Shown piece by piece: positions 2,011 to 26,345 of a DNA stretch of 64,000 nucleotides. The position numbers were made by a program, and so were the translations under genes. Numbering within the stretch: the first letter of the stretch is position 1; each line of letters starts with the position of its first letter. The notes under the pieces were generated by a model. It saw nothing but the letters and a program-made list of their open reading frames with translations. It had not been told where the DNA came from and made no database searches. The stretch is from Phallusia mammillata (lineage: Eukaryota): NCBI GenBank assembly GCA_965637545.1, contig OZ281496.1, positions 25,978,001 through 26,042,000 of the forward strand, given 5' to 3'.

Positions 2011-4886
2011 GAAACTTGGGTCCCAACTCTCCGTTTCAGTGGTCTCCAATTCAGTAGTTTCCAATCTGCAACAACAACAATAAAACTTTATTTCGTAGAA
2101 GATGCAGAAATGCGCATTTAGTGTAACATCATAGAGAAAACAATATTTTTGTGACATACAAAAAAACTAAATATTTAGCACTCCAATGCTTATTTGATTC
2201 ATAAATTGAAGATGTACTAACCTGTGAATGATTGGAATGTTGGTCAGGCTGTCCCCATCTTGACTCTAAGATTTAACTGTTGGATCCATACGGGTCTGCA
2301 AGACAGCATTGGTCGAATTAAGGATCTGAATCAAAAACATAAAAAATAACAATGTTTTTTTAAACAAATCCTCTTAGGCTTGTTAATACTTACATTTAAA
2401 ATGTTCGCATATGAACCGGATTCCTCCACTTCTCTTTGCTGGCTTCGGAACAGGATTGAGAAGCGTAGATGGACAAACATCTGCAACAAAACTTACAGCA
2501 ACATTTGATGTAGTTACTATTGTTATCTTATTATTAAAAGTTCTATTGTTAACATTTTTACCCATACTGTCAAATGAAAGAACACACGTGACATGCACAA
2601 TTTTAAGTGTAACGTGCAAAATTTGATTACTTGCTAAGCTACACCTTAATTATTGGATCTTCACTGAACTTGAGGTCGCAGATTATGCGGTAAACTATTT
2701 AATGATGTTTCCCAAATCCAATAATACAGGTGGCAACGTAAGAAAATGCCAGAAAACCTGAAGCAAAACGACCCAACGTCATGAAATATAAGAACGTATT
2801 GCAGTTAACCGGATGCCTTTTTAGTAAAAAAATCACCTGGAACATTTCGGTTGTGAAGTCGTCTTTGGTAGTCTCTCATCGGCCAAACTTTCCTCGCCAC
2901 GAGTTACTGCAACAAGATTGACATATAACAAACCTGGTACACAAAGGAACTTCAAATATACAATAAAAAATATCCAACATTTATAATAAACGAAAAGACA
3001 AAACTTACAGGCGAGGGCGAATTTGAAGTGTAATTCAAAAAAGAGTGGTCTGGTAAATGGATGCCTCCTTCATCCGGTCCCAAATTTTGTTCCACGAAAA
3101 CAAACCGGTCTAGTTAACGTTTCGTATTTGTTTTTGGCACGTATGTATTAAGGCCCACATTAGACCAGCTAGTTCAAAAATAAACAAGTTACCTGTATCT
3201 TTCCTCTGTATTTATGTTCGGTTGCTTATCATCGCCAACTCTTCGGTCGCCACGAATTACTGAAGAAAGACTTATCCACGTCTTGTTGTGTTTCTGCAAA
3301 ATAGAAAGCAAACGCAGTACCAAGAAACGCAGCACAAAATGCTAAGTTCAGTTTAGTTCTAATAATCAGAAAACGCGTGACATGCAACGTGCCAAACTCC
3401 CATGCAATGTTGGTGTGTTGGAATCCTCACTACATTACAACTTAACAACTGTATATGAGGCCAAGTAATTAGCCGTGTTAAAAAGATAACTTAACTTCAA
3501 TCGGTTTGGTCATAACTTCCATCTTGGCTCAACGCGACTCTTTCCTGAAAGAAAACAAACTAAGGCAGCAACAGAAAACGTAACAAAGTATTTAATTATC
3601 TTCACACATTATACGTTTTAAATAACACAATACAGTGTCTTCACATCGTCGTAACTAAATCTAGGCGATTCATTGTACGGAATGTGCCGTGCCTCTCAGG
3701 TTGTTTACGTACATGTAACATACATAAAAGCTGCTTATGAACCGGATTTCTCCGCTGCTTTACTGTTTTGGGTCAGAAAGTAGCAGTGTGACGGACAATA
3801 ATCTGCAACGAAACTTACGGCAGAATTTGACATGCAAAACCGAATGGTAATTTACTGTTATCCATGATGAAATAATGGTAATTTACTGTTATCCATGCTG
3901 CCAAACGAAAGAACACACGTTACAAGCAAAAAATGAAGTGTAACATGCCAATTAACCATGCAAAATTTAAATATGCCAATTCACCATGCAAAATAATAAT
4001 ACTAGCTATACTACAACTTAACTTAACTATTGTTTCTTTCCCCAATTTCGAATCGACGGCAACGGAGAAGATACCAGTAGTCCTGAAATACGAAAGCAAA
4101 AAGTCCACCAGATCGCACCTAAACTTGTTACTATGAAGACGTTTTACCGTCGACACTTTTAGTTTACCACCACTAAAGGAAACGTGCCTCTCATCGCTCA
4201 AGTCTTCGCCGTGTAAAAAAAAACTGCACTCCAATGGTATTTGAAGTTGTACTAACCTGTGAAAGAGCTGCTTCGCCGTCTTGGCTCGACAATTTAACTG
4301 TTGAAGGATCCTTACGGTCCAGCAAGACAGCACAAATAAGGATCTGAATGAAAAAATACATAACTTATGAAAAAACAGAGTATGAAAAAAACAGTCAATT
4401 TGCTACAAAACGACAATAAAGTTTATCGATTACGACTGTATTCTTACATTTGGGATGATTGTGATGTAGAATATAAACTGAATTCTTTCAGGTTTATTTT
4501 TTCAGTTAATTTTGATGCTTCTCTGGTGCCGGTTTGACGAAGGTCTGAAACAAAACTAAAGTTTATTGAAATGTTACAAGCGTAACATAAACTTACATTC
4601 GATAAGTAATGTTTCATGTGTCGTTTAAAAAAACGACATTGTCCATGGCTTTCCCATTAAGTCGTTTGATGCCTGTCTAATGCTCTGACAAACATCTGCA
4701 ACAAAACTTACAGCAGCATTCGAGTTCACGATAAATATAGTTTCACAAAAGGTTATACTTCAACCGTTGCTGACAACTGAATAGTCAACCAAGCACAAAG
4801 TGACATGCAAAGCCATAAGTGCGACATACCAAACAACATCCGAGAATTGCAGCTACGGGAAAATGCCTACATAGGCACCAAACAAG

Positions 4887-7800
4887 TTCGCCTGTAAACA
4901 AGACAATTACCTGTTTTCTACTTTTTCGCTGCAAGTCATTGTTGACGAATCCTGTCGCTGACTATTCTTTTGAAAGAGTTACTATAAAAACAACAAACGG
5001 AACAATCAGCAAAGAAACATAGCGTAAAACACATTAAAACAAATTCAAACAAAACTCGCTGGCGTAGTAAGACGTGATTTGGGTTTGTAGCTTTGAAATG
5101 GTCTTCTCTCACTGCCAACTCTTTTCACCGGGAGTCACTAAGAAAGGACAACAGAAGAAACTTAACTATTACATAAAAGACCGAGTAGCAAAGGCATAAA
5201 TTGCAACAACTTACAAGCACAAGTGAAAAGATGCCTCGTCAGGATCCATTCTCCAAGAAACCTGTTGCAAAACAAGATTACAGATAAAATGGAGAAATAA
5301 TATCTTTTTCTCACATACATCAAAAAAACTGTACTCCATTGCTTATTTGACTCATACACATTCCGTTGTACTAACCTGTGAAATAACTGTTGGTCAGGGA
5401 TTCACCGTCTTGGCTCCAGGATTCAACTGTTGGCAGAGGATCTCTACGGTCCTGCAAAACAGCACAGGTCGAAGGATCTAAATGACAAAATACATAACAT
5501 AACAATGTTATCAAATATCTGTAACAATTATCCTACATATGCGGCAAGTGTCGTGCCTCTAAAGTTGTTTACTTACATCCAACATGGTCGCCTCTGACCC
5601 AGATTTCCTGCTTTACTGGCTTCGGAACAGCAAGTAGAAGGGCGACGGACAATAATCTGCAAAAAAAATTACAGCCGAATTTGATGTGCAAAACGGAATT
5701 AAGACGAAATTATAGTAATTTACTGTTACCCATGCTGCCAACTGCAAAATCACACGTAAAATGCAAAAATTAAAGTGTAACATGCCAATTCACCATGCAA
5801 AATAGGAATACTAGCTATACTACGACTTAACTTAACTATTATTTATTTATCAAACTTCGAATCGGTGGTAACGTAAGAAGATACCAGGAGACCTGAAATA
5901 TAAAAGCAGTAAGTCAACCAGTTTAAAAGTTTGCCTGTAAACAAGACAATTACCGTTTTTTTCTACATTTTCGTTGCAAGTCATTGTTGCCGAATCCCGT
6001 CGCTGACTATTCTTTTGAAAGAGTTACTATAAAAAAAAATCAGCAAAGAAACATAGCGTAAGACACTTAAAAACAAATTCAAACAAAACTCGCTGGCGTA
6101 GTAAAACGTGATTTGGGTTTGTAGCTTTGAAATGGTCTTCTCTCACTGCCAACTCTTTTCACCGGGAGTCACTAAGAAAGGACAACAGAAGAAACTTAAC
6201 TGTTACACAAAAGACCGAGTAGCAAAGGCATAAATTACAACAACTTACAGACACGGTCCAAATGCGGTTTACAAGTGAAAAGATGCCTCGTCAGGATCCA
6301 TTCTACAAGACACCTGTTACAAAACAAGATTACAGATAAAATGCAGAAACAATATCTTTATCTCACATACACATTGCTTATTTGACTCATACACATTCCG
6401 TTGCACTAACCTGTGAAAGAACTGTTGGTCAGGGATTCACCGTCTTGGCTCCAGGATTCAACTGTTGGCAGAGGATCTCTACGGTCCTGCAAAACAGCAC
6501 AGGTCGAAGGATCTATATGACAAAATACATAAAATAACAATGTTATCAAATATCTGTAACAATTATCCTACATATGCGGCAAAGTGTCGTGCCTCTAAAG
6601 TTGTCTACTTACATCCATCATGGTCGCCTCTGACCCAGATTTCCTGCTTCATTGGCTTCAGCAAGTAGAGGGGTGACGGTCAAACATCTGCAACAAAACA
6701 TCTGCTGCAGAATTTGATGCACTAACCGAATTAAGACAAAATTATGGTGATTTACTGTTATCCATGCTGCCAACTCAAAGAGCACACGTGACATGCAAAA
6801 TATGAAGTGACATGCCAATTCGTCATGCAAAACTAGAATACTAGCTATACTACAACTTAACTTAACTATTGTATCTTTCTCGAACTTCGAATCGGTGGTA
6901 ACGTAAGAATACCAGGAGTCCTGAAATATAAAAGCAGAAAGTCAACCAGTTCGCACCCACATTATGGTGTTCTGTTTTCAACATACAAAATCACCTGGAC
7001 TTTTTGGTTGTAAAGTGATCTTTGGTCGTCTCTCATCACAAGTTACTGCAAAAAGAATAACATTCATCAAACCTTTGGACCCATAAAGAAACACAGCGTA
7101 AGCACACTTCAAAACAAATAAAGCGTCATGGACTTTTGTCATGAATTATTTCAAACAAAACTCACTGGCGTAGTAAGACGTGATTTGGGTTTGCAGTTTT
7201 TAAATGGCCTTCCCTTATCGCCAGATCTTCTTCACTGCGTGTTACTAATAATGGACAACAGAAGAAACTTTACTAATAAACAAAAATACCGAGTGGCAAA
7301 AGCATAAATTTCAAGAACTTACAGGCAAGATCCAAATGTGATTCATAAGTGACAAGATGCGTCGTCAGGATCCATTCTCCAAGACGTCTGTTACAAAACA
7401 AGACTGCACATAAAATGCAGAAACAATATCTTTTCTCACATACAGGCCCTAGGATTTAACTGTTGGATCCCTACGGTCCTGCATGACAGCACAGGTCGAA
7501 GATTCCAAATGAAAAAAAACTACATAAAAAAACAAAGTTAAAAAATATCAACAATAATTATCCTTCGCATACGGCAGAGTTTCGTGCCTCTAAAGTTGTT
7601 TACTTACATCGAACATGGTCGCCTCTGACCAAGATTTCCTGCGACGGACAATAATCTGCAAAAAAAATTACAGCCGAATTTGATGTGCAAACCGGAATTA
7701 AGACGAAATTATAGTAATTTACTGTTACCCATGCTGACAACTGAAAGATCACACGTAAAATGCAAAAATTAAAGTGTAACATGCCAATTCACCATGCAAA

Positions 7801-10800
7801 ATAGGAATACTAGCTATACTACGACTTAACTTAACTATTATTTATTTATCAAACTTCGAATCGGTGGTAACGTAAGAAGATACCAGGAGACCTGAAATAT
7901 AAAAGCAGTAAGTCAACCAGTTTAAAAGTTTGCCTGTAAACAAGACAATTACCGTTTTTTTCTACATTTTCGTTGCAAGTCATTGTTGCCGAATCCCGTC
8001 GCTGACTATTCTTTTGAAAGAGTTACTATAAAAAAAAATCAGCAAAGAAACATAGCGTAAGACACTTAAAAACAAATTCAAACAAAACTCGCTGGCGTAG
8101 TAAAACGTGATTTGGGTTTGTAGCTTTGAAATGGTCTTCTCTCACTGCCAACTCTTTTCACCGGGAGTCACTAAGAAAGGACAACAGAAGAAACTTAACT
8201 GTTACACAAAAGACCGAGTAGCAAAGGCATAAATTACAACAACTTACAGACACGGTCCAAATGCGGTTTACAAGTGAAAAGATGCCTCGTCAGGATCCAT
8301 TCTACAAGACACCTGTTACAAAACAAGATTACAGATAAAATGCAGAAACAATATCTTTATCTCACATACACATTGCTTATTTGACTCATACACATTCCGT
8401 TGCACTAACCTGTGAAAGAACTGTTGGTCAGGGATTCACCGTCTTGGCTCCAGGATTCAACTGTTGGCAGAGGATCTCTACGGTCCTGCAAAACAGCACA
8501 GGTCGAAGGATCTATATGACAAAATACATAAAATAACAATGTTATCAAATATCTGTAACAATTATCCTACATATGCGGCAAAGTGTCGTGCCTCTAAAGT
8601 TGTCTACTTACATCCATCATGGTCGCCTCTGACCCAGATTTCCTGCTTCATTGGCTTCAGCAAGTAGAGGGGTGACGGTCAAACATCTGCAACAAAACAT
8701 CTGCTGCAGAATTTGATGCACTAACCGAATTAAGACAAAATTATGGTGATTTACTGTTATCCATGCTGCCAACTCAAAGAGCACACGTGACATGCAAAAT
8801 ATGAAGTGACATGCCAATTCGTCATGCAAAACTAGAATACTAGCTATACTACAACTTAACTTAACTATTGTATCTTTCTCGAACTTCGAATCGGTGGTAA
8901 CGTAAGAATACCAGGAGTCCTGAAATATAAAAGCAGAAAGTCAACCAGTTCGCACCCACATTATGGTGTTCTGTTTTCAACATACAAAATCACCTGGACT
9001 TTTTGGTTGTAAAGTGATCTTTGGTCGTCTCTCATCACAAGTTACTGCAAAAAGAATAACATTCATCAAACCTTTGGACCCATAAAGAAACACAGCGTAA
9101 GCACACTTCAAAACAAATAAAGCGTCATGGACTTTTGTCATGAATTATTTCAAACAAAACTCACTGGCGTAGTAAGACGTGATTTGGGTTTGCAGTTTTT
9201 AAATGGCCTTCCCTTATCGCCAGATCTTCTTCACTGCGTGTTACTAATAATGGACAACAGAAGAAACTTTACTAATAAACAAAAATACCGAGTGGCAAAA
9301 GCATAAATTTCAAGAACTTACAGGCAAGATCCAAATGTGATTCATAAGTGACAAGATGCGTCGTCAGGATCCATTCTCCAAGACGTCTGTTACAAAACAA
9401 GACTGCACATAAAATGCAGAAACAATATCTTTTCTCACATACAGGCCCTAGGATTTAACTGTTGGATCCCTACGGTCCTGCATGACAGCACAGGTCGAAG
9501 ATTCCAAATGAAAAAAAACTACATAAAAAAACAAAGTTAAAAAATATCAACAATAATTATCCTTCGCATACGGCAGAGTTTCGTGCCTCTAAAGTTGTTT
9601 ACTTACATCGAACATGGTCGCCTCTGACCAAGATTTCCTGCGACGGACAATAATCTGCAAAAAAAATTACAGCCGAATTTGATGTGCAAACCGGAATTAA
9701 GACGAAATTATAGTAATTTACTGTTACCCATGCTGACAACTGAAAGATCACACGTAAAATGCAAAAATTAAAGTGTAACATGCCAATTCACCATGCAAAA
9801 TAGGAATACTAGCTATACTACGACTTAACTTAACTATTATTTATTTATCAAACTTCGAATCGGTGGTAACGTAAGAAGATACCAGGAGACCTGAAATATA
9901 AAAGCAGTAAGTCAACCAGTTTAAAAGTTTGCCTGTAAACAAGACAATTACCGTTTTTTTCTACATTTTCGTTGCAAGTCATTGTTGCCGAATCCCGTCG
10001 CTGACTATTCTTTTGAAAGAGTTACTATAAAAAAAAATCAGCAAAGAAACATAGCGTAAGACACTTAAAAACAAATTCAAACAAAACTCGCTGGCGTAGT
10101 AAAACGTGATTTGGGTTTGTAGCTTTGAAATGGTCTTCTCTCACTGCCAACTCTTTTCACCGGGAGTCACTAAGAAAGGACAACAGAAGAAACTTAACTG
10201 TTACACAAAAGACCGAGTAGCAAAGGCATAAATTACAACAACTTACAGACACGATCCAAATGCGGTTTACAAGTGAAAAGATGCCTCGTCAGGATCCATT
10301 CTCCAAGACACCTGTTACAAAACAAGATTACAGATAAAATGCAGAAACAATATCTTTATCTCACATACACATTGCTTATTTGACTCATACACATTCCGTT
10401 GCACTAACCTGTGAAAGAACTGTTGGTCAGGGATTCACCGTCTTGGCTCCAGGATTCAACTGTTGGCAGAGGATCTCTACGGTCCTGCAAAACAGCACAG
10501 GTCGAAGGATCTATATGACAAAATACATAAAATAACAATGTTATCAAATATCTGTAACAATTATCCTACATATGCGGCAAAGTGTCGTGCCTCTAAAGTT
10601 GTCTACTTACATCCATCATGGTCGCCTCTGACCCAGATTTCCTGCTTCATTGGCTTCAGCAAGTAGAGGGGTGACGGTCAAACATCTGCAACAAAACATC
10701 TGCTGCAGAATTTGATGCACTAACCGAATTAAGACAAAATTATGGTGATTTACTGTTATCCATGCTGCCAACTCAAAGAGCACACGTGACATGTAAAATA

Positions 10801-13800: not shown

Positions 13801-15760
13801 TTGTTTCTTTCTCAAACTTCGAATCGGTGGTAACGTAAGAAGATACCAGGAGACCTGAAATATAAAAGCAGAAAGTCAACCAGTTTAAAAGTTCGCCTGT
13901 AAACAAGACAATTACCGTTATTTCTATATTTTCGTTGCAAGTCATTGTTGCCGAATCCCGTCGCTGACTATTCTTTTGAAAGAGTTACTATAAAAAAACG
14001 CAACAACTCTTTTCACTGGGAGTCACTAAGAAAGGACAACAGAAGAAACTTAACTATTACACAAAAGACCGAGTAGCAAAGGCATAAATTACAACAACTT
14101 ACAGACACGATCCAAATGCGATTTACAAGTGAAAAGATGCCTCGTCAGGATCCATTCTCCAAGACACCTGTTACAAAACAAGATTACAGATAAAATGCAG
14201 AAACAATATCTTTATCTCACATACACATTGCTTATTTGACTCATACACATTCCGTTGCACTAACCTGTGAAATAACTGTTGGTCAGGGATTCACCGTCTT
14301 GGCTCCAGAATTCAACTGTTGGCAGAGGATCTCTACGGTCCTGCAAAACAGCACAGGTCGAAGCATCTAAATGACAAAATACATAAAATAACAACGTTAT
14401 CAAATATCGGTAACAATTATCCTACATATGCGGCAAAGTGTCGTGCCTCTAAAGTTGTTTACTTACATCCAACATGGTCGCCTCTGAGGCTCTGACCCAG
14501 ATTTCCTGCTTTATTGGCTTCAGCAAGTAGATGGGTGACTGACAAACATCTGCAACAAAACATCTGCTGCAGAATTTGATGCACTAACCGAATTAAGACA
14601 AAATTATGGTGATTTACTGTTATCCATGCTGCCAACTCAAAGAGCACACGTGACATGCAAAATATGAAGTGACATGCCAATTCGCCATGCAAAACTAGAA
14701 TACTAGCTATACTACAACTGAACTTAACTTAACTATTGTGTCTTTCTCGAACTTCGAATCGGTGGTAACGTAAGAATGCCAGGAGTCCTGAAATATAAAA
14801 GCAGAAAGTCAACCAGTTCGCACCCACATTATCGTGTTCTGTTTTCAACATACAAAATCACCTGGACTTTGTGGTTGTAAAGTGATCTTTGGTCGTCTCT
14901 CATCACAAGTTACTGCAAAAAGAATAACATTCATCAAACCTTTGGACCTATAAAGAAACACAGCGTAAGCACACTTCAAAACAAATCAAGGTCATTAACT
15001 TTTGTCATGAATTATTTCAAGCAAAACTCACTGGCGTAGTAGGAGGTGATTTGGGTTTGCAGTTTTTAAATGGTCTTCCCTTATCGCCAGATCTTCTTCA
15101 CTGCGTGTTACTAATAATGGACAGCAGAAGAAACCTAACTAATAAACAAAAATACCGAGTAGCAAAAGCATAAATTTCAAGAACTTACAGGCAAGATCCA
15201 AATGTGATTCAAAAGTGACAAGATGCGTCGTCAGGATCCATTCTCCAAGACGTCTGTTACAAAACAAGACTGCAGATAAAATGCAGAAACAATATCTTTT
15301 CTCACATACAGGCCCTAGGATTTAACTGTTGGATCCCTACGGTCCTGCAAGACAGCACAGGTCGAAGATTCTAAATGAAAAAAAAAACTACATAAAATAA
15401 CAAAGTTAACAAATATAAGCAATAATTATCCTTCGCATACGGCAGAGTTTCGTGCCTCTAAAGTTGTTTACTTACATCCAACATGGTCGCCTCTGACCTT
15501 GATTTCCTGCTTTACTGGCTTCGGAACAGCAAGTAGAAGGGTGACGGACAATAATCTGCAAAAAAAATTACAGCCGAATTTGATGTGCAAAACGGAATTA
15601 AGACGAAATTATAGTAATTTACTGTTACCCATGCTGCCAACTGAAAAAACACACGTGACATGCAAAATATGAAAGGTAACATGCCAATTCACCATGCAAA
15701 ATTAGAATACTAGCTATACTACAACTTAACTTAACTATGGTGTCTTTCCCGAATTTCGGT
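4887..15760. repeat. Tandem array of ~2 kb units, each a dimer of two diverged ~1 kb subunits
   Basis: Identical ORFs recur at 6465, 8464 and 10463 (period 1999 bp). Unit landmark ttYgcctgtaaacaagacaattacc occurs near 4887, 5931, 7930, 9929, 11970 and 13892. Confidence 0.95.
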
Positions 15761-18700
15761 AGCAACGTAAGAAAATACGAGGAGTTCTGAATTATGAAAA
15801 GTATAAATATCAGCCAGTTTGCATCCACATTTGCGTTTTCCGTTTTCGACAAACAAAATCACCTGGACTTTTTCAGTTGTAAAGTCGTTTTTGGTCGTCT
15901 CTCATCTTCAGAAGTGTGAAGTCGTTATCATCACAAATTGCTGCAACAAGAATGACATTCAGCAAACCCTTGGGCTCACATATAACCTCCACTGCTTTTG
16001 CAGGCTTTGATGCTTCGCTGAAAAGGTCATGAAAAAAGAATGAGACTACAATACATTTACTGTTGTTAATATTCTCAGTTTAAACGCGCTTACTAATATT
16101 TGGAACACACGTGACATGCAAAACACTAAGTGCAGCACGCCAAGTCACCATGCAAACTAAAATGCTTACTATGCAACAACCTTACAATTCGGTATGTCGT
16201 TAAAAATGCATTGCTATAATGCGGTAAACCATTTAAGACACAAAACTTTAAATCAGATTCACTTAACTTTAATCCGAAAAGTCAAAGATATTGCCGATTG
16301 TCTTGAGTACACGATCCATGTCTTGTTGGCTTCCTGTAAAAAGAAAAGCAAAAGCAGTAACAAGAGACTTACCACACAGTACTAAATCTAATTTAACTCT
16401 AATGTTTATGTGTGTACTCACACTCATGGCATCCGCATAGTCGGTGTGACATGCCAAACCTCCATGTAAAAGTGGTATGTGACGTGCAACATGCCAAACC
16501 ACCATGTATAGTTGGAATCCTTAATATAACAACACCTTTTATACTTGCCAATAATATGGCCAAATAATTAGGTCGTGAAAAAAAGCAACTTGACTCCAAT
16601 CGGTTTGGCTAAAAGTTTAATCTTGGTTCAACGCGACCTTTCCTGTAAAAAAACAAATAAAGCAGCAACAAGAAACCAAACGTAGTATTTAATTAAGTTT
16701 ACACTATACGTTTTAAGTAACATGCGCCGATAGGATAAGTGCACGATATGCTATCTTCACATGTTTGTCAATAAAATCTAGGCGTTACATTACAGGCAAT
16801 GAATTTAAATATGTACATGCCTGCAGGATTGTTGTAAAACAGAAAATTCCACGTTTTACGCATTCAACTGTTCAGTCGGCGGTTTAACCATCATTGGAAA
16901 TCCAAACGAAGACTGAAACAAAACAATCCACCATGTATCTACATAGCAACAATGCCATGTGTTTACAAAAGCTACTAAAATCTATTGAACAAATTGTTTT
17001 TCGGTATCGTTGTAGAAGCAAACAAGTGTGTAACTTTGTTTACTCTACATCGACTTTATAAAAGAAAAAATTACCTGCAGATCTCATTCGCCCATCCACC
17101 TCCGACACGAGCAGGAGAAGAATAACAGCCAGCACGCGCTCAAGATATGTCGGTTTCCTCTTTTCTGTTTCGTCCACCAATCAGCACGCTTGCCATTTGG
17201 AACGTCACACGGATGTTTATTACCCGTCCAGTGGAAAGCCTTATTGCAACAACTAGTAAACCTTGAATTGTTTTCTCTGTACAATAAAAATAAAACAGCA
17301 TCAGGACGTAACAATTTGTAACATATTTTACAATTTGCATTATAATACGTTTGAAAATTACAACATGTAAAGACAGGATTAAGTGCACGTTAAACGGCCC
17401 TTCCATGTTGGCATTATTAAAACACGATTTTGTGTAGTTAACAAACACTTGCCTTTAGTTTCAGTTTGACGGAATTCAGCAGAGTCCGCGGTGTTCACGA
17501 GAGAAAATCCTTGGCGTATAAAGGTTTTTTTCTCGCAAGCGGTAAAGGATAACCAGCGTGCAATACGATAAAAGTTATTATTACGAAGTACATGTAAAAA
17601 AGTAAATTACCTATTTCTTAATGAACTTGATGAGGTCTTCTATGCAGCTATGGTTTCTCGTGAGCAGCTCCGGTGCAGAATTTCTAGGAAACAAGTAGAG
17701 TATCAAATATAACATTCAGGTGTGTGATAGGGTATGAAGAAACAGTGGCATATTGTATAAGAAACACAGTTTGAAATATAGTAAACGGAAAACAAAAATG
17801 CAGTTTAGCGAATAAGACTGAGAGGAGGTTAACTTAAATTTGGGAAGGTGTTGTTACTGTTTTACAAAATAATTGGATTCCTTCAGGTTTTGTTTTCGCA
17901 CTTGGTTTAAGCATCAACTTTGTAAAGTTAAATAGAAGCGTAATCTAAACTTACAATGTTTCATGCGTCGTTGAAATAAACTGGATTTTTCAACTGGCTT
18001 TCTGATGCTCCGACAAACATCTGTAACAAAACTGACACCAGCATTCGAGTTGTTTTACAAAGGGTAATATATTTTTCCCGTTGCTGATAACCGAATACTC
18101 CACTAAACACAAGTGACATATAAAACCGCAAGTGCAACACGCCAAGGCAACATGCTAAGAACAACAAGAAGTTTGCCATTCATTGCAGCAACGGGAAAAT
18201 GCCTGCTTAAAATCATAGGTTTGCTTGTAAACAACTAAATTACCTGCGACATTATCGCCGTAAGTTATTGTTGACGTCTCCCATTGCTGACGCCTAAAAA
18301 TACAAATGTACCAATGGGCAATAAACTTACTATAACGACATTTGTTGTCACAAAACAGAATATTCAAATAAAACTTACTGCAAAGTAAGACGTGACATGG
18401 TTTTTCAGCTTTTGTATAGTCGTCCCTCATCGCCAACTCTTCTTCGCTATGTGTTACGTAAGAAAAAACGACAGAATTCATAAATTGAAGTTGTAATAAC
18501 CTGTGAAAGATTGGAATGTTGGTCAGGCTGTCTCCATCCTGGCTCTAAGATTTAACTGCTGGATCCTTACGGGCCTGCAAGACACCATAGGTCAAAGGAT
18601 CTGAATCAAAAACACAAAATAGCAATGTTTTTTTAACAAAACCTCTTAAAATTGTTTATACTTTACTTGCACAACAGGTTTGCACATAAACCGGATTTCT

Positions 18701-21700
18701 CCACTTCTTTTCTGGCTTCAGAACAAAAAGTAGAAGCATAGATTGACAAACATCTGCAACAAAACTTACAGCAACATTTGGTGTACGTAGTTACCATTTA
18801 AAAGTTTTATTACATTTTTACATGCTGCCAACTAAAAGAACACACGTGACATGCAAAATGTGAAGTGTTATTTGCCATATTACCATGCAACATTAGAATA
18901 CTTGCTATACTACAACTTAACTATTGGGTCTTTCCTGAACTTGAGGTCGCGGATTTTGCGGCAAACTATTCGGTGATGTTTCACAAGTTTAATCTTTCAG
19001 GTGGCACCGTAAGAAAATGCCAGAAAACCTGTAAGAAAACGACCCAATATCATGAAATATAAAAAAGTATCAAAGTCAACCTAATGTTTACGTTTCTAGC
19101 AAAAAAAGTGACCTAGGACATTTCGGTTGTGAAGTCATCTTTGGTAGTCTATCATCGCCCAAGCTTTCCTCACAACGAGTTACTGCCACAAGATTGACCT
19201 ATAACAAACCTGGTACAGGAAAAGGAACCAAGCACCACAAACTTCCAATAAATTACCAAGACTTGTAAAAAAACAAATATAACAAAACTTACTGGCGAGG
19301 ACAATTTTGATGTGTAATGCAGAAGAGAGGGAGATAGAGAGAAGTCTGGTAAATAGATGCCTCATCCCGTCCCAATCTATCTGTTCCACCTAAACGAACA
19401 CGTACATCAGCTAACCTTTTGTATTTGTTTTAGCACGTAGCATTCATATTTAAGTTCACTTAAGACCAGCGATTTGTAGACATATTGAACAGAATAGTTA
19501 ACTGCTATTGCACTAACGTTTTGAGGATTTAACTGTTGGTCAAAAATCTCTGTGGTCAGAGCAGGATCAACGCTCCCAAAGGGAAGTATTAGCGACAACA
19601 ATCCCAGGCCTTTTGACTATTGTAATTCCAAGTTTGTTTACTTACATGTAACATCTCCGAATATAAACCAGATTCCTTTGCTGCTTTAGCAGGTTTTCAT
19701 GCTGTGTAGAAACTTTGAAGAAAAGTAGCCTGCAAGACGCACAACAAACCTAATAAGACTAAATTACACTTGGTTTAATATTGTTATCTTCAAAGGTAGT
19801 GCTTACTTACTCAGAACACACGTTAAATACAAAACATGAAGTGCAACATGCCAAACCGCCATGTAAAGCTTAAATTCTCGCTACACTGCAACTTAACGAC
19901 CGATGTGAATCACCAATTGTGCGCCATGCCAATTACCCCACGGAAAACTAAAAAATCAATTGAACTTAACTTTAATCGTTTGAAGACAATATTTTATTCA
20001 TGTCTTGTTGTCTTCCTGTAAAAGAAAGGCAGAAGCAGAACCAGGAAGCGCAAGACACAGTCATAAACCTAGCCACATCTAATCTTTCACCGATGCTGAC
20101 AACTTAGTAGTCGGAACACACGTGACATGCCAAACGCCAAGTGCGACATGCCAAACCAGAATGCAAAACTGAAAACTAAACAATGCTACAGCTTAGTAAC
20201 TATAACTGATCATTAACCTAGCAAATATTAAAAGCATAAATCTCCTATTATGTGACCAACCAATTAGGACATGTAAAATCGAAAAACAAGGTAACTTCAC
20301 TTCAAACGGTTCGGCAATTTCCATCTTGGCTCTTCGTAACTGTTGTTGTCTTCCTGTAAAAACAAAGCAAAAGCAGTGCCAAGAAACACAACACAGGGAT
20401 ATATTTTGTTGACAATATACGTTTCAAGTAACGTGCAAAGATGGAATATGTGCACTTTATACCACCTTTGCATTGTATTGGCTAAATTTAGGCGCTATAT
20501 TACGTCAAATTAATGAAAACATTTACGTGCCTGTTGTTCTCTAGTTCCCATTTCTAAGCATCATTGGATGCACAAAAGTCTAAACTCTAAAAAACAATCC
20601 ATTAGCAGTACCAGGGAACCTAAACAAACTTTGAACGCATTTAACCCCGGAATTTTTCAATAAGTAAACTGGTGTGCACCAACGTTTACTTCTGTATGGA
20701 CACCTATTAATTACTTTATAATAACAGAATTACCTACATAAACCCCAGATGACCATCCACCTTCAACGCGAGCAGCAAAAGCGGAAGGACCGATCGCACA
20801 AGCCCAAAAATGTGATCCAATCTTTGTTTATTTTGCCTTCGGTCAATCACAAGGCTTGTTTTTGACACGTCACATGGAGGTACGGTCAGTAGGTCTTTAT
20901 CACCTCCGCGGGAACTAAAGAAAAGCACACATTAGGTTTGATTTCCTCAAAAAGGTATTACTGAGGTCGGTTCAGCCTATGCTCACAATATAGTGGCCAG
21001 AGCGCACGTGACATGCCCAACATCAGTGCAACATGCCAATTCCGCAAGCAAAACCGAAAACCATACACTACAAGAGGTTGGCAAATAGGTGACAGGACAT
21101 TAAAACCCAAAAAACGAGGTAACTCAACTTCAGTCGATTTGGCTTCAATCTCCATTGTGGCTCTACGCGACTGTTGTTACCTGCGAAAGACAAGGCAATA
21201 GGAAGATAAGATATGTGCACTCTATATTATCATATTTACGTACCTGTTTTCTCGTTGCATGTATCTTTTCACTATTCGCTATAATCCTCAATCGATGCAC
21301 AAAAGTACAAAATGAACCTAAAACAACGCAATACATTTGCATTGTCATGCAGTTAGGGAATCTAAACACATTAAATCCGGTATTATTGCAGAATAAAACT
21401 ATTTTGCACCCAGGTTTGCTTATGCAATTACTTATAGTCAGAACACATGTGACATGCAAAACACGAAGTGCAACATGCCAAATCACCATGCCACTACAAC
21501 TTATTGAAATTTTCCAGCAAAACATTGACGCCATGGATAACTTAACTATCAACTTAACTTTATTCGGTTTAAAGTCAATCTTGGTTCTCCGAGTACTCTC
21601 TGTCTTGTTGCCTTCCTAAAATAGAAAAACAGAAGCAGAACCAAGAAACGCAAAACACAGTAACAAACTGGTTTATATGTTATCTTTGGTTAACATCTAA

Positions 21701-24700
21701 AAATCTAACAGTCGCAACACACGTGAGATGCCAAACGCCAAGTGCAACATGCCAAACCAGAATGCAAAACTGAAAACTAGAATATACTACAGCTTAATAA
21801 CTAGCCTATAACTAATAATTAACCTAACAAATATTAAAAGCATAAACCTCCAATTATGTGACCAACTAATTAGGACATGTAAAATCGAAAAACACAGTAA
21901 CTTAACTTCAATCGGTTTGGCTTCAATTTCCACCTTGACTCTTCGATGTTGTTGTCTTCCAGTAAAAACAAAGCAAAAGCAGTGCCAAGAAACAGAAGAC
22001 AGTGATATATTTCATTGACTATATACGATTTAAGTAACATGCAAAGATGGGATACGTGCACTCTATATACCCCCTTACAGTGTGTTGGCTAAATTTAGGC
22101 GCTATATTACGTCAAATTAATGAAATCATTTACGTGACTGTTGTTCTCTTGTTTTCATTTCTAACCATCATTGGAAGTCTAAAAACCAATCCACTAGCAG
22201 TACCACGCATTTAGGGAACCTAAGCAAACTTTGAACGCTTGCACCAGCGTTTACTTCTGTGTGGATACCAATTAATTTACTTTGTAACAACGATACTACC
22301 TGCATAGACCCCAGATGACCATCCACCTTTAACGCGAGCAGCAAAAGCAGAACGACCGATCGCACAAGCCCAAAACTTCGACCTATCACACGGCTTGTTT
22401 TTTTCGGAAACTAACCAAAAACACACATTTAAGTTCCTAGAGATTTCCTGAAAAAGGTATTACTCGGACGGACGCTATTTTGCACTTATCTGCAAAGTAA
22501 TTAATGTTGGTCAAGTCAAGGATCACTGCAGTCCTGCAAGACAACACAGGTCGACAGCTCTGAAAATACAAAATACAGCACTAAACCTAGTTCATATCTA
22601 ATCGTTTATTCAGGCCTATGCACACACGTGACATGCCCAACATAAGTGCAACATGCCAAGTCCGCATGCGAATATGAAAACTATACAACAGCTTAACAAC
22701 TAGGTGGCCAACTATACAGAACATTAAAACCAAAAAAAAACGAGTTAACTCAACTTCAATCTCCATCTTGGCTCTTAGCGATTGTTGTTGCCTCTAATCC
22801 TCAATCGATGCACAAAACGACAAATAGAACCTAAAACAAAACAATGAATTAGCAGTGCCATGCATTTAGGAAAGCTAAGCAAACTAATAGAACACTTACC
22901 GGTAGTATTGCAGAAAAAAAGTAGTGCGCATACAAGTTTGCTTATACGCTCAGAACACATGTGGCATGCAAAACACAAAGTGCAACATGCCAAATCACCA
23001 TGCCACTACAACATACTGGAATTTCGCGGCAAAACATTGACGCCATCGATAACTTAACTATCAACTTAACTTTGTTCGGTTTAAAGTCAATCTTGGTTCT
23101 TCCAGTACTCTGTCTTGTTGCCTTCCTAAAATAGAAAAAAAGAAGCAGAACCAAGAAACGCAAAACACAGTAACGAACTAACTTATATGCTATCTTGGGT
23201 TTACACCGATCTAAAAATCTAATAGTCGCAACACACGAGACATGCCAAACGCCAAGTGCAACATGCCAAACCAGAATGCAAAACTGAAAACTGAACTATA
23301 CTACAGCTGAACGGTAACTCAACTTTAATCAATTTGGATTTGGTTCCCTTCTACCGTCCCATGGAGCTTTTTTTCTACAATTAGTCAATTCCACTTCGAG
23401 CTGATTGATTAGTTGCTTTAGGCATAAACCTTAGGAAGACTTCGTTCAAGTAAGCTTGCGGGGGCGTGACTCGATTGGCGCTTGTGACACTGCAGTGCTT
23501 GCCGGAAGCTAAAAACGGATTTTACCGTAGAAACGAACCTGTGGTGTTAACACAGACAAAATCCAACAAAAACTAACTAAATTTACCTGCTGCCAGCCGC
23601 TACATGCTGCAAAATGTCGGTGCACATTAATAACCGTTATCCATAAAACACAAATGAAAACACAAAAATAGAGACTCTTTATAACGATGTACTCCAGTAC
23701 AGAAACATTTGTTTTTAACTCGATTTCTGTCTCATACTAAGAAACGTAACATTGCGAACTAAACCTAGTTTACTTGTATTCTGCCTTACACAAACAGCAA
23801 CATACCCCCAATCAGCATGCAGACGATTTTGCCGTTGCCGAAACGTATGTGCGGTTTGTAACCGAAATCTCAACATAGTTCAACACAGTTCAGTTGGTAC
23901 AAGCTAAAATTCGACCAAAGAGTAAATAGCTTACCCCAGAACCTGTACTTTTTTATTGTAGGATATTGACCTTGATTATTTTTTTGATCAAGAAAAGAGG
24001 TATAGCATCGTTTAGTTCCTCTTCTCGGCACAGAAAACGAACACCGAGTTTCCATTTTTCCTGTACGAAAGTAAACACCGGAAGAGCAAAAATATATTGA
24101 AAAATTAAAGCTACTTTATCAGTGCACGCTGCACTGTCTTTTTTGGACCAAGATTGTACTAATTTAATCGGGAACAAAAATCTTATGTTTGACTATTACC
24201 GACAATGATTAAGTTGCAAGAATTACAGACTTTAGTAATCTTTTAGAGCATTTTTTCAAAGCCAAATGAAATTTACCGTCAAATAATTTCCGAAACTTTT
24301 TTTTATGCTATTTTATTTCGGAAATTCGGCAAGCGGTGCACTTCTACCAATGACGACAAGCGAATAGGTACCCAAAACACATGACGTGCAAAGAAGTGCA
24401 ACATGCTCAAGCACCGGGCTAGCTATTCGCATCAACATGGTAGAAATGTTGGTTTAATTCGTTGTTTATGTCACACTGTTTGCATGCCGCCGCTATTAAA
24501 AAGCTTCATAACAAACTTATGGGGCGTTACATTATGCTTTCTTTGTGCGTTGTGGGACAAAGAGACTTTAATGCGGAAATCAATTATGTTTAACCATACA
24601 TTCTAACAAATTACTGGTTTAAAATTAAATTTTCTGACAACTAAATTTACTTACATTGCTGCCTCACGTATCCGTGTCGAAACGTAGGGGTGGTAGGTAA

Positions 24701-25750
24701 CCGAAATCTGAAACAACAAACAACAGTGTGATGTGTAGAAAACTAGGCCGAAAGAACAAAAAATACAAAAATAAATCTAGCAAATGGTCCCACCGCATAT
24801 TTACGTGTATTGCATTTTATTAAAAAGTATTTAGCTCTTGATTAGTCTTTATCAATTGTCCAACCATATATTCTGTAAAATATGCTGGACTAACATGCTG
24901 TATATTTTGTAAGCCATGTAAGGTAAGGTATATTACGTATATTTTTAGGTTTTATACGATAGGCATGTAAGTGATCTTTCCTAAATGCAATTTTCAAAAG
25001 TTAAAAACTCGTCTAAAAATTAGTCACCTGTAACTCGAAGGCCTTGTTTGTTTTTTAACATCTCCTTCCTTCTCGAAAAAAGGACGGTCGCGTTTCCACG
25101 TTTACTGCATGAAAAAAAAAGCAGAGGCAGAAACGTATGGAAAAATAAAAGCTAACTTACTTGTCATGCGCTAAAATATGTCAACATGTGAAGACAGGAT
25201 AAGTTCACGGTAAACTGTCTTCCCAATAGAAATGTGATAATTTTATTGGGCATAGTATACATTACGACAACATCTCAGTCCAACGTTATCCATGTGATTT
25301 ACGTCGCAATAACGTTTAGATAAGTTTGAATAATAACAATATGCTTAAGTCACAAAACATAGGTTATCAATTTGTTTTTGAGCCAATTGAAAATTTGTAG
25401 CGTGACGAGTGACCACATTAGTAAACTCAAATTTATCTATTTGTTTCAAAATTTGCAGCACACTTCTACCAATGCCGACAAACGAATAGTTACCCGAAAC
25501 ACATTTCATGCAAACAATAAAGTGCAACATGCTCACGCACGGGCTAGCTATTCGCAACAACATGATAGAAGTGTTAGCTTTAGTTTGCTGTTTATGTCAC
25601 ACTATGAGTATGTACGGTAAGTTTATCAAGATTTTATTTTAAAATAATTCTTCAAAAGGGCTTTTGTTAAACGGGTTCACTCACATTGCTGCCTTCCATT
25701 ACTGTGTCGAAACTTAGGTGCGCCTTGTGACCAAATTCTGAATCTAAACA
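15760..25750. repeat. Older diverged duplicates of the same repeat family
   Basis: 18480-19330 resembles 2205-3050. 20030-20870 resembles 21620-22390. 21430-21790 resembles 22945-23310. Related blocks occur at 23780, 24650 and 25680. The cacacgtgacatgc motif recurs throughout. Confidence 0.85.
17071..17215 (-). promoter_or_regulatory. Putative promoter and first exon of a non-coding unit
   Basis: CCAAT at 17177-17181, ACGTCAC at ~17202, a CpG-rich stretch ending in minus-strand donor cag|gtaatt at ~17074. Related copies at ~20729-20880 and ~22296-22395. Confidence 0.5.
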
Positions 25751-26055
25751 AAAATAAACACGGCTCAATGCATTTTAACCGCCACATGTTTTAATCATAA
25801 ATGGCAAGTTATCATAGTAAGCCAGGCCTGTTGTTTCTTATTTTCTTGAAATAATGTTTCTTTACCCTGAATTTGAATAGGATAAGGGAATCATATATAA
25901 TTTAAATGAAACAAAAAGATCTATCTTGTATTAAACAAATTTTGAAAACCTAAATGCATTTTAAACATTACACATCGGTTACAATGCAGAATTAAACCTA
26001 TGCACTAAAGTTTATTGCTACACCTACACCAGCAAGTAAGTTTAGAAACAATAGC

Positions 26056-26345
26056 ATTACCCGCACACTCTCCGTTCAGCACAACATCCTTCAGCAAGAA
26101 ACATCAGAAAAGAATGAGCCAACACACGCACACTAGCAAGAAGTGTGACATCCCCTTTTTTCTCTTCGTCCTCATGACCAATCAGAGTCCTTGTTTTAAA
26201 AAACGTCTCAGGGGCGGTCTGAAACCAACCAATGACAAGCGTTATTGCACCAATTAGTGAGTTGCGTTTGGGAAGAGGGTAATTGAATGCTAGAGGCCAA
26301 GCGTTAGAACGCTCATTGGTCAAAGAGGCATCACGTGACACCACT
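26056..26345. promoter_or_regulatory. CCAAT-rich promoter, possibly bidirectional
   Basis: CCAAT at 26178, 26229 and 26250; ATTGG at 26315; GGGGCGG at ~26210; TCACGTGA at 26331; minus-strand donor gg|gtaatg near 26059. Confidence 0.6.

What the first reader, a model, noticed from the sequence alone, without database searches (positions are those of the whole stretch)
2210..26150. A 24 kb 'satellite' that looks like a tandem family of densely spliced non-coding genes
Seen: each ~1 kb subunit holds about 5-6 minus-strand exon-like blocks of 35-85 nt bounded by good acceptors (ttttgcag, tttcag, gtaacag) and donors (gtaagt, gtgagt, gttagt, gtaatt). Splice signals persist in strongly diverged copies, while exon interiors take frameshifting indels (a 7-nt insertion at ~12547 and ~14486, a ~29-nt deletion at ~7640). 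Some exons are paralogues of each other. Inference: selection acts on splicing or RNA processing rather than on a protein, as in small-RNA host genes or piRNA precursors. I recognise no known family here, so this is the best candidate for an undescribed system in the window.
Basis: partly seen in the sequence, partly recalled or inferred. Interest (0 to 1): 0.8.

Follow-up and report, generated by a model that had tools for sequence, protein, structure and literature searches.

The report
Spliced non-coding gene of repeated mini-exons
The 24 kb "satellite" is one long non-coding sea-squirt gene built from tandem copies of a mini-exon cassette; evolution has kept its splice sites and a three-GCAUG intron motif but not its exon sequences, so the RNA or its processing probably matters, not a protein.

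Summary
Window 2166-26150 (minus strand) is a tandem array. Its core (4884-16008) is a ~2 kb higher-order repeat of two ~1 kb subunits, each with six GT-AG-bounded mini-exons of 48-102 nt.

- **Splice sites are conserved.** Across 63 non-redundant diverged copies, exons are no better conserved than introns (0.74 vs 0.75). The 11 splice dinucleotides are kept in 89% of cells, against 54-59% for other AG/GT (0 of 100,000 permutations).
- **No coding signal.** No reading frame survives, and exon length changes are multiples of three no more often than in introns.
- **Splicing is shown.** RNA-run contigs carry introns removed at the predicted sites. One junction (2222|2065) is unique to this locus.
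- **It is one gene.** There is a single conserved promoter with exon 1 (about 26345-26061). The cassettes are spliced to each other, and the transcript runs into the GU-rich minisatellite at 167-1877.
- **It belongs to a family.** At least 8 other arrays on the same chromosome share the promoter module.
- **The best-conserved element** is an intronic triple-GCAUG module, with 24 clusters in this locus. It fits an Rbfox-type binding platform and is not a small-RNA gene.

This scan had already found the family at other loci of this genome. The host-gene or piRNA idea is not supported. The function is inferred, not shown.

The parts
26176..26345 (-). Promoter module: E-box CACGTG (26337-26332), CCAAT (26319-26315) and inverted CCAAT boxes ATTGG (26233-26229, 26182-26178)
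   Evidence: Found once in the window. It lies upstream of, and on the same strand as, at least 8 arrays on chromosome C3. The boxes are invariant or nearly so in an 8-locus alignment.
26061..26155 (-). Exon 1, with the 5' end approximate; donor GT at 26060-26059 (cgg|GTAATG)
   Evidence: The GTAATGCTATTG donor context is conserved in all 8 paralogous loci, and homology decays after it. No RNA evidence was obtained for this exon.
16009..26060 (-). 5' zone of strongly diverged mini-exon cassettes, including ~1.5-1.6 kb repeats at 20-24 kb, with 10 GCAUG clusters
   Evidence: Repeat families D17, D18 and D20. GCAUG clusters lie at 16115, 16450, 18821, 20126, 21012, 21453, 22632, 22965, 23241 and 25507. 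The zone is colinear with the paralogous locus at C3:27.55-27.565 Mb.
4884..16008 (-). Core array: about 5.5 copies of a ~2 kb higher-order repeat (A + B subunits), six mini-exons per subunit
   Evidence: Depth in the DNA-like runs is about 3.5-4 times that of the single-copy flanks, which fits the assembled copy number (table 8: 344-406 against 98-103 in X2).
6995..7045 (-). B-unit exon 1 (51 nt)
   Evidence: AG and GT bounded. Acceptor kept in 16 of 16 and donor in 14 of 15 diverged copies. The exon 6 to exon 1 junction is seen in an RNA contig from the paralogous array (X4 record 26).
6867..6920 (-). B-unit exon 2 (54 nt), predicted only
   Evidence: Acceptor kept in 18 of 19 copies and donor in 17 of 24, the weakest site. 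No spliced RNA evidence. X1 contigs cover introns 1 and 2 unspliced (6894-7015 and 6671-6920).
6763..6846 (-). Triple-GCAUG module in intron 2, starting about 39 nt after exon 2: UUUUGCAUG..UUGGCAUGUCAC..UUUUGCAUGUCACGUGUG, plus a fourth, weaker GCAUG
   Evidence: This is the most retained and best conserved block of the family. The three sites are intact in 66-75% of diverged copies, against 31% for an average 5-mer. There are 24 clusters, all between 3381 and 25532 and none in the rest of the window. No covariation.
6613..6687 (-). B-unit exon 3 (75 nt)
   Evidence: Acceptor kept in 42 of 44 and donor in 34 of 40 copies. The exon 3 to exon 4 junction is seen in X1 and X4 contigs from the paralogous array. 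The joined 32-mer is absent from the genome.
6411..6512 (-). B-unit exon 4 (102 nt); acceptor catatag| at 6513
   Evidence: RNA contig pieces begin exactly at 6512. Acceptor kept in 29 of 33 and donor in 21 of 24 copies.
6249..6313 (-). B-unit exon 5 (65 nt), the only exon of nearly fixed length
   Evidence: It is 65 nt in 28 of 34 copies. The exon 4 to exon 5 junction has depth 22 in X1 (table 5c).
6094..6171 (-). B-unit exon 6 (78 nt); the donor here is GC (cca|GCGAGT), while A units have GT
   Evidence: The exon 5 to exon 6 and exon 6 to exon 1 junctions appear in X4 record 26.
5376..5477 (-). Exon 4 of the A-type unit at 6101-5068, with RNA support at this locus
   Evidence: X1 record 6 matches 5373-5477 exactly with 0 mismatches. 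The match starts right after catttag| and ends at cacag|GTT, and non-colinear sequence flanks it on both sides. X1 depth in the next bin equals the 44 further nt of exon 5 (table 2).
2166..5067 (-). 3' zone of diverged cassettes, including additional exon types also present in the paralog
   Evidence: X1 contigs match exactly at 2835-2969, 3278-3451, 3698-3831 and 4696-4818.
2394..2480 (-). Exon-3-like exon of the last cassette, with RNA support
   Evidence: X1 record 1 ends exactly at the donor aaat|gtaagt at 2394. The record length adds up as 122 + 104 + 160 = 386, which fits removal of the intron at 2393-2326.
2222..2325 (-). Exon-4-like exon of the last cassette, with RNA support
   Evidence: The loose end of an X1 contig at 2222 continues with a 30-mer whose only genomic match is 2065-2036 on the minus strand.
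2066..2221 (-). Intron (GT at 2221-2220, ttgttgttgcag| ending at 2066) removed in RNA of this locus
1906..2065 (-). Start of the last detected exon; at least 160 nt are present in the X1 contig
   Evidence: There is no AATAAA or ATTAAA on the minus strand from 2065 to 1, so the 3' end was not located.
167..1877 (-). 20-nt minisatellite, GU-rich on the transcribed strand (U 53%, G 28%), directly downstream of the last detected exon and probably part of it
   Evidence: Only the stretch 2065-1906 is shown to be in RNA. Inclusion of the repeat itself is inferred from the missing polyadenylation signal and missing donor.

Best explanation
**Shown.**
- Window ~26345 to below 1906 (minus strand) is one transcription unit.
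- It has a conserved CCAAT/E-box promoter and first exon, then ~24 kb of tandemly amplified cassettes of 48-102-nt mini-exons separated by 70-180-nt introns.
- RNA contigs show the introns removed and the cassettes spliced to each other.
- The transcript carries no conserved reading frame.
- Across paralogous arrays that differ at 25-35% of positions, selection has kept the GT/AG splice sites and one intronic module per cassette. That module has three GCAUG sites and a UCACGUGUG tail. The exon sequences were not kept.
- The locus is one of at least 8-10 paralogous genes on a ~4.5 Mb stretch of one chromosome.

**Inferred.**
- The gene makes a long non-coding RNA whose working part is the primary or partly spliced transcript.
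- With 87 GCAUG sites in 24 clusters, it offers a highly multivalent platform for a GCAUG-binding splicing factor of the Rbfox type.
- Bound just downstream of the tiny exon 2, such a factor would promote that exon's definition.
- In bulk, the nascent or intron-retaining RNA would hold the factor at the locus, acting as a sink or scaffold.
- The GU-rich minisatellite in or after the last exon may add a second protein-binding tract.
- Splicing is kept because correct processing of the many mini-introns decides how much module-bearing RNA persists.
For: **Structure.** The array and higher-order repeat are.

**Selection.**
- Exon identity is 0.738 and intron identity 0.753.
- Splice dinucleotides score 0.89, against 0.54 and 0.59 for other AG and GT. 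No permutation of 100,000 reached this.
- In this window 138 of 146 splice dinucleotides are intact.

**Non-coding.**
- Spliced A and B units have stops in all frames.
- No frame is stop-free across copies; the best is exon 5 at 74%.
- Indels are not biased to multiples of 3.
- Substitution periodicity is no stronger than in introns.
- pN/pS is not frame-specific.
- The longest unspliced ORFs have no Pfam family.

**Splicing.**
- X4 record 26 carries exons 3-4-5-6-1 joined.
- The X1 exon 4 to exon 5 joint has depth 22.
- X1 records 1 and 6 are from this locus.
- The source array of the paralogous contigs was identified.
- The joined exon 3 to exon 4 form is absent from genomic DNA.
- Junction 2222|2065 is unique in the genome, with canonical GT..AG.

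**One gene, many loci.**
- The locus is colinear with the one at C3:27.53-27.565 Mb.
- The promoter module is single in the window and precedes at least 8 arrays.

**GCAUG module.**
- The density is 3.63 per kb on the minus strand, against 0.42 per kb on the plus strand.
- There are 24 clusters, confined to the unit.
- The core sites are conserved while the spacers vary.
- There is no fold or covariation and no Rfam family.
- Introns 1 and 2, the second of which carries the module, are the ones seen unspliced in X1.
Against: - No binding data exist, and no Rbfox gene was confirmed in this genome. The Fox-1_C search was blank, but so were its controls.
- The module contains the palindromic E-box CACGTG, so a DNA-level role cannot be excluded.
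- The strand asymmetry of GCAUG follows trivially from the fixed orientation of the repeat.
- After splicing, the intronic modules would normally be degraded. The intron-retention hint rests on two low-depth contigs (depth 7-8), which could be nascent RNA or DNA carry-over.
- The RNA nature of runs X1 and X4 is the tool's guess. It is supported only by the intron-less contigs themselves.
- Ten other runs of the same kind (also RNA only by the tool's guess) held almost none of the array's words, so expression is low or restricted.
- Exon 2, the exon the module should control, has no RNA support.
- Two near-identical units of the paralogous array carry a 139-codon open frame.
Confidence: 0.55

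Rival explanations
1. It is a spliced non-coding gene as described, but the GCAUG modules are only ordinary intronic splicing enhancers that let the tiny exons be recognised. The product that matters is something else made from the transcript, for instance small RNAs (a piRNA or siRNA precursor), circular RNAs, or simply the act of transcription through the region.
For: Splice sites and modules are conserved while exons are not. Established splicing maps show that Rbfox sites downstream of an exon enhance its inclusion (my own knowledge).
Against: No structured or known small-RNA family was found. Nothing in the sequence points to a particular processed product. The exons, which make up the mature RNA, evolve as freely as the introns.
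Confidence: 0.2
2. It is a decaying array of cassettes that once coded for a repetitive protein. The splice sites persist because decay is recent or because a few copies elsewhere still code.
For: Exons 5 and 6 share an open 48-codon frame in many copies. Two near-identical units of the array at 27.53 Mb have a 139-codon open frame starting at an ATG in exon 3. A decayed terminal coding exon with AATAAA lies upstream of the promoter at several loci.
Against: The 139-codon frame is broken in the third sister unit and in all other units. pN/pS in the open frame is 0.66, and a closed frame gives 0.46. Exon lengths vary freely. 11-50% of distinct copies of a single exon have stops in all three frames. 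Splice sites are kept at 25-35% divergence, which is too old for mere recency.
Confidence: 0.1
3. It is a DNA-level regulatory array. The conserved module (E-box CACGTG with octamer-like TTTGCAT) is a transcription-factor site amplified into an enhancer cluster, and the transcripts and their splicing are by-products.
For: CACGTG sits in the module and also in the promoter. The module is the piece kept in every array, including the short 600-700-nt repeats.
Against: This does not explain the conservation of 11 splice sites per cassette. The three GCAUG cores are conserved independently of CACGVTG variants, for instance CACATG copies at 21453 and 22965.
Confidence: 0.08
4. It is a neutral satellite or segmental duplication whose GT/AG-bounded blocks are cryptic sites used by chance in read-through transcripts.
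For: It has tandem higher-order structure with 100% identical neighbouring copies. The family is confined to one chromosome region. Expression is low.
Against: Splice dinucleotides are conserved far above identical dinucleotides elsewhere. It has its own conserved promoter and first exon. Junctions are consistent in two runs.
Confidence: 0.05

Closest known systems
SNHG14 (SNURF-SNRPN) host-gene arrays of SNORD116 and SNORD115 in mammals (PMC11608373)
   Same: Both are one long non-coding transcript made of tandemly repeated units, each with short non-coding exons and introns. In both, the exons are unconstrained while splicing and intron content are what is kept.
   Different: In SNHG14 every repeated intron releases a C/D box snoRNA. 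Here no snoRNA or other structured RNA is detectable, and the conserved intron element is a cluster of GCAUG sites. The two have no sequence relationship.
Prader-Willi-region sno-lncRNAs proposed as sponges for Fox-family splicing regulators (PMC4234469, which cites the original 2012 work)
   Same: Both are non-coding RNA from a tandem host-gene array that carries many Fox motifs. UGCAUG, GCAUGU and UGGUGA all occur in the module here. The sponge model is the same as the inferred one.
   Different: Sno-lncRNAs are stabilised by snoRNA ends, and no such ends exist here. Binding and sponging are untested here.
Repeat-bearing nuclear lncRNAs that hold RNA-binding proteins, such as Drosophila hsr-omega and human NORAD
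   Same: Both have a Pol II non-coding gene whose body or 3' part is a tandem repeat offering many copies of a protein-binding motif.
   Different: In those genes the repeats sit in exonic RNA. Here the motif sits in introns of a densely spliced array, and splice sites themselves are under selection.
C19MC-type microRNA clusters in repeated introns
   Same: Both have repeated non-coding exon-intron units with a conserved intronic element.
   Different: No hairpin precursor is present. The only predicted helix is the self-complementarity of two GCAUG sites, with no compensatory change.
Related arrays of this same genome noted earlier by this scan (s1-375444, s1-410980, s1-375403, s1-392425)
   Same: They are the same repeat family, with the same triple-GCAUG module and the same non-coding mini-exon architecture, on the same chromosome.
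   Different: This locus adds locus-specific spliced RNA junctions, the single promoter and first exon shared by at least 8 loci, the quantified splice-site selection, and the link to the GU-rich minisatellite. One earlier locus is reported to repeat the promoter inside the unit, which this one does not.

Membership tests
snoRNA host gene | Introns encode C/D or H/ACA box snoRNAs | tested here: not met
   Rfam gives no match at gathering threshold over the whole window and none at E<=1 over one full repeat. No box and terminal-stem arrangement was seen in the conserved intron.
snoRNA host gene | Non-coding, poorly conserved exons with conserved splicing | tested here: met
microRNA cluster host (C19MC-like) | Conserved ~60-80-nt hairpin precursors in the repeated introns | tested here: not met
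   The intron 2 fold has z = -0.98. The alignment fold of 13 modules gives 8 pairs, 0 compensatory changes and a covariation term of +0.17.
Protein-coding gene with repeated domains | A reading frame kept open across copies, with indels in multiples of three and dN/dS below 1 | tested here: not met
   The longest ORFs have no Pfam family.
Rbfox-regulated or Rbfox-binding RNA | Conserved (U)GCAUG clusters within a few hundred nt of the regulated exon, on the transcribed strand | tested here: met
   Three sites lie 39-75 nt after exon 2. They are intact in 66-75% of diverged copies, against 31% background. There are 24 clusters in the unit.
Rbfox-regulated or Rbfox-binding RNA | An Rbfox protein is present and binds the sites | tested here: inconclusive
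   The Fox-1_C (PF12414) search of the genome was blank, but its controls were blank too. Binding cannot be tested with these tools.
Satellite DNA (non-genic) | Head-to-tail tandem repeat with higher-order structure | tested here: met
Satellite DNA (non-genic) | No gene-like features (promoter, processed transcript, site-specific constraint) | tested here: not met
   There is a conserved promoter and exon 1, spliced RNA and splice-site constraint.
piRNA cluster precursor | Abundant 24-31-nt RNAs with 1U bias from the locus | not testable with these tools
   No small-RNA runs could be laid.

The most novel reading that the evidence does not exclude
A lineage-specific, chromosomally clustered family of chordate lncRNA genes has evolved by amplifying a mini-exon cassette. 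Its purpose would be to present hundreds of intronic GCAUG sites, plus a GU-rich tail, to splicing regulators. Each gene would then act as a tunable nuclear sink or assembly site for Rbfox-type proteins, with splice-site selection setting the dwell time of the module-bearing RNA. This would be an independent invention of the role proposed for the mammalian Prader-Willi sno-lncRNAs, achieved without snoRNA ends.
Probability: 0.3. Interest if true: 0.75.

Novelty: new variant of a known kind. Interest (0 to 1): 0.6.

Why it matters
Cases where selection can be shown to act on splice sites and an intronic protein-binding motif, while exon sequence drifts freely, are rare and mostly mammalian (snoRNA and microRNA host genes). 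This family has dozens of paralogous cassettes at graded divergence. That gives a natural mutagenesis series for asking what a "splicing-only" non-coding gene is selected for. If the GCAUG modules do bind an Rbfox-type factor, it also gives a tractable invertebrate-chordate model of RNA-based sequestration of a splicing regulator. For annotation, ~24 kb that looks like satellite DNA should be recorded as a gene.

Tried and rejected
- **Tandem Repeats Finder.** It cannot see the array, because the period exceeds 500 nt. It found only the 20-nt minisatellite.
- **Rfam.** No hit at gathering threshold for the window. None at E<=1 for one repeat. None for the paralog flank or the downstream region.
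- **Folding.** Single-sequence and alignment folding of the conserved intron or module gave no signal.
- **Coding tests.** Three-frame translation of spliced units, stop-free-frame counts, indel phase, substitution periodicity and pN/pS by frame were all negative.
- **Pfam.** The four longest unspliced ORFs in the array gave nothing.
- **TSP1 link.** Mapping TSP1 repeats to see whether every array follows a thrombospondin-repeat gene gave no hits near the other arrays among the 150 scored. The link was dropped.
- **Fox-1_C search of the genome.** It was uninformative, because the controls were also blank.
- **Literature.** Searches found no description of such arrays in tunicates.
- **Joined spliced models.** They exist only inside local scripts. 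The single exons (16-34 codons) are too short for the protein searches, so that step was left out.
- **Protein database searches.** The large searches were not used, because the claim rests on lack of frame conservation, not on absence of relatives.

Full report
**What is there.**
The window is part of chromosome C3 (25,978,001-26,042,000) of a 240 Mb genome. Earlier notes of this scan call the organism a sea squirt.
- From 2166 to about 26150 the minus strand carries a tandem structure.
- The core (4884-15906) is a ~2 kb higher-order repeat of two ~1 kb subunits, A (~927 nt) and B (~1072 nt), about 80% alike.
- Two neighbouring 1999-nt copies (6035-8033 and 8034-10032) are identical. The others are 93-96% alike.
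- More diverged copies flank the core at 2166-4367 and 16-25.5 kb.
- Tandem Repeats Finder missed the array because its period exceeds 500 nt.
- The window has no N.

**Exon-like blocks and their conservation.**
Each subunit has six blocks bounded by AG and GT on the minus strand (coordinates are in the parts list). They measure 48-102 nt once the acceptor of the fourth block is moved 26 nt upstream, as the RNA contigs require.

To test whether the signals are more than chance, I collected 101 copies of the unit with nhmmer. They came from this window and from eleven other arrays of the same chromosome. I reduced them to 63 rows less than 93% alike.
- Identity to the reference is 0.738 in exons and 0.753 in introns.
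- The eleven splice dinucleotides are intact in 237 of 267 cells (0.89). Other AG dinucleotides score 0.54 and other GT 0.59.
- No set of 11 random dinucleotides in 100,000 draws reached the observed mean.
- Within this window 138 of 146 sites are intact. In its strongly diverged copies the count is 33 of 36.
- The copies are related, so the counts are not independent. The same relatedness applies to the background sites.

**Coding potential.**
- Spliced A and B units (382 and 425 nt, neither a multiple of three) have stops in all frames.
- No exon has a frame free of stops across copies. The best is exon 5 at 74%. Between 11% and 50% of distinct copies of a single exon are closed in all three frames.
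- Exon length differences are multiples of three in 20 of 60 distinct cases. Introns give 22 of 82.
- Substitution periodicity is no stronger in exons than in introns.
- Exons 5 and 6 share an open 48-codon frame in many copies. Its pN/pS is 0.66, while a closed frame gives 0.46.
- Two near-identical units of the paralogous array hold a 139-codon open frame. It is broken in their sister unit and everywhere else.
- The longest unspliced ORFs have no Pfam family.

I read the locus as non-coding, with a small residual chance of an ancient coding origin. Joined spliced models were analysed only in local scripts and were not sent to any search tool. The single exons are too short to search.

**RNA evidence.**
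One run search and one laying of contigs were allowed.
- Runs X2 and X3 behave as genomic DNA. They cover everything, at about 100 and 300 per single copy and 3.5-4 times that in the core.
- Runs X1 and X4 are small contig sets that the tool guesses to be RNA.
- X4 record 26 (621 nt) carries, in order and without introns, pieces matching exon 3, exon 4, exon 5, exon 6 and exon 1 of the next cassette. Similarity is about 90%, so it comes from a paralog.
- A 30-mer from the matching X1 contig places the source in the array at C3:27.533-27.550 Mb, with 9 hits.
- The joined exon 3 to exon 4 32-mer is absent from the genome at up to 3 mismatches. The joint was therefore made by splicing and not copied from DNA.

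This locus itself is also transcribed and spliced.
- X1 record 6 matches exon 4 of the unit at 6101-5068 exactly. The match runs from the base after catttag| to cacag|, with foreign sequence on both sides.
- X1 record 1 (386 nt) decomposes exactly into 122 nt ending at the donor at 2394, the 104-nt exon 2325-2222, and 160 further nt.
- The first 30 of those 160 nt occur once in the genome, at 2065-2036 on the minus strand. They lie directly after ttgttgttgcag|.
- Introns 1 and 2 of B-type units appear unspliced in X1 at low depth.
- Ten other runs that the tool likewise guesses to be RNA hold almost none of the array, so expression is low or restricted.

**One gene, a family of loci.**
The whole stretch 2000-29800 is colinear with C3:27.532-27.565 Mb.

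A ~330-450-nt module at 26400-25940 occurs once in the window. It lies upstream of, and on the same strand as, at least eight arrays between 26.6 and 30.4 Mb.

Its alignment shows an E-box, one CCAAT box and inverted CCAAT boxes. These are followed by about 95 nt ending in a GTAATG donor conserved in all eight loci. After that donor the paralogs diverge. I read this as promoter plus exon 1.

The cassettes are therefore internal repeats of one gene, consistent with the exon 6 to exon 1 junction, and not separate genes.

The last detected exon starts at 2065 and heads into the 20-nt minisatellite at 1877-167. That repeat is GU-rich on the transcribed strand. No AATAAA or ATTAAA occurs on that strand down to the window start, so the 3' end was not found.

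**The conserved intron element.**
The block most often retained and best conserved in the family is the first ~90 nt of intron 2.
- It holds three GCAUG sites in the pattern UUUUGCAUG, UUGGCAUGUCAC, UUUUGCAUGUCACGUGUG. The spacers between them vary.
- The three sites are intact in 66-75% of diverged copies, against 31% for an average 5-mer.
- The unit has 87 GCAUG sites on the transcribed strand in 24 clusters, all between 3381 and 25532. The other 38 kb of the window has none clustered on that strand.
- The element has no unusual folding energy. Its only alignment helix is the self-complementarity of two GCAUG sites, with no compensatory change.
- Rfam finds nothing.
- Earlier notes of this scan reached the same reading for sister arrays at 27.78, 28.21 and 28.38 Mb. 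I used them as a lead and repeated the conservation and folding tests on this locus.

**Mechanism.**
Shown:
- a spliced, non-coding, internally repeated Pol II-type gene;
- purifying selection on its splice sites and on the GCAUG cores;
- no detectable purifying selection on the exon sequences.

Inferred:
- The GCAUG clusters bind an Rbfox-type factor. UGCAUG, GCAUGU and UGGUGA are the Fox motifs used in PMC4234469.
- Placed just downstream of the 54-nt exon 2, they should promote its inclusion. This follows from the established position rule for Rbfox, which is my own knowledge.
- Multiplied 24-fold in one transcript and over at least 8 loci, they could hold the factor on nascent or intron-retaining RNA.
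- The closest analogies are the SNORD116/115 host-gene arrays (PMC11608373) and the Fox-binding sno-lncRNAs derived from them (PMC4234469). This locus has no snoRNAs.

Rivals:
- the modules are plain enhancers and the product is something untested, such as small RNAs;
- a decayed coding array;
- a DNA-level E-box array;
- a neutral satellite.

The last two do not explain the splice-site conservation.

**Limits.**
- Only contigs could be laid, and only once. The start, the 3' end, exon 2 usage, strand and expression level are not measured.
- The RNA nature of X1 and X4 rests on the intron-less contigs.
- No other species could be compared.
- Presence of an Rbfox gene was not established.

**Verdict.**
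The core of the interpretation, selection on splicing and not on a protein, is supported. The "family of genes" and "small-RNA host" parts are corrected or unsupported. The kind of system is known (repeat-built lncRNA or host gene), but this variant is not described in the literature I could search. It has intronic GCAUG platforms, no small RNA, and splice-site-only constraint across an amplified family. The scan had already met the family on other DNA of this genome.

Noticed in passing
window 167-1877: A 20-nt minisatellite (ACAACATAGACAAACACGCA on the plus strand). It is GU-rich on the minus strand, with UGUUG 108 times and UGCGUG 32 times. It lies directly downstream of the last RNA-supported exon of the non-coding gene and is probably part of its terminal exon.
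   Followed up: partly
L034 (C3:25970001-25978000), just beyond the window start, minus strand: A CA-rich microsatellite followed by at least 7.4 kb of a 108-nt satellite (~70 copies). Each unit contains UGGAUGGAUGGAUGAUGAAUUCUGAAAC and AATAAA/ATTAAA. It is 79% alike to a 95-nt satellite downstream of the paralogous array at C3 ~27.526-27.529 Mb, so the duplicated segment includes it. No Rfam hit was found for the paralogous copy (L025); L034 itself was not scanned.
   Followed up: partly
window ~27395-27865 (minus strand): A module with an acceptor, a decayed terminal coding exon and a conserved AATAAA. It is present 0.3-1.3 kb upstream of the promoter module at five other loci. A 42-codon frame ending ...GSFTGTLVVQTENGDSINVTLKATAC* is open in two loci (L029, L031). 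It is stopped in the window copy and in the copy at 27.56 Mb.
   Followed up: partly
window 41499-42317 (+): A 272-aa ORF with a weak GIY-YIG match (PF01541, 21.5 bits, just under the cut-off). It is probably a fragment of a Penelope-like retroelement lying among the thrombospondin-repeat exons.
   Followed up: partly
window 33249-63050 (minus strand): A series of ORFs encoding thrombospondin type 1 repeats (WxxWxxCSxxCGxG...), from one or more large genes upstream of the non-coding gene on the same strand. The other arrays of the family did not show TSP1 hits nearby among the 150 scored.
   Followed up: no
C3:27,533,000-27,537,300 (the three 1886-nt units at par_rc 30946-35985 of the 50-kb stitched minus-strand copy of C3:27518001-27568000): The two full 1886-nt units of the paralogous array (L001, L006, L007, L019) carry a 139-codon open frame across exons 3 to 8, starting MFDILRPVLSCRTV.... 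The third sister unit and all other units break it.
   Followed up: yes
window 6035-10032: Two adjacent 1999-nt repeat copies are 100% identical. This reflects either very recent duplication or conversion, or an assembly effect. Depth in the DNA-like runs fits roughly the assembled copy number.
   Followed up: partly
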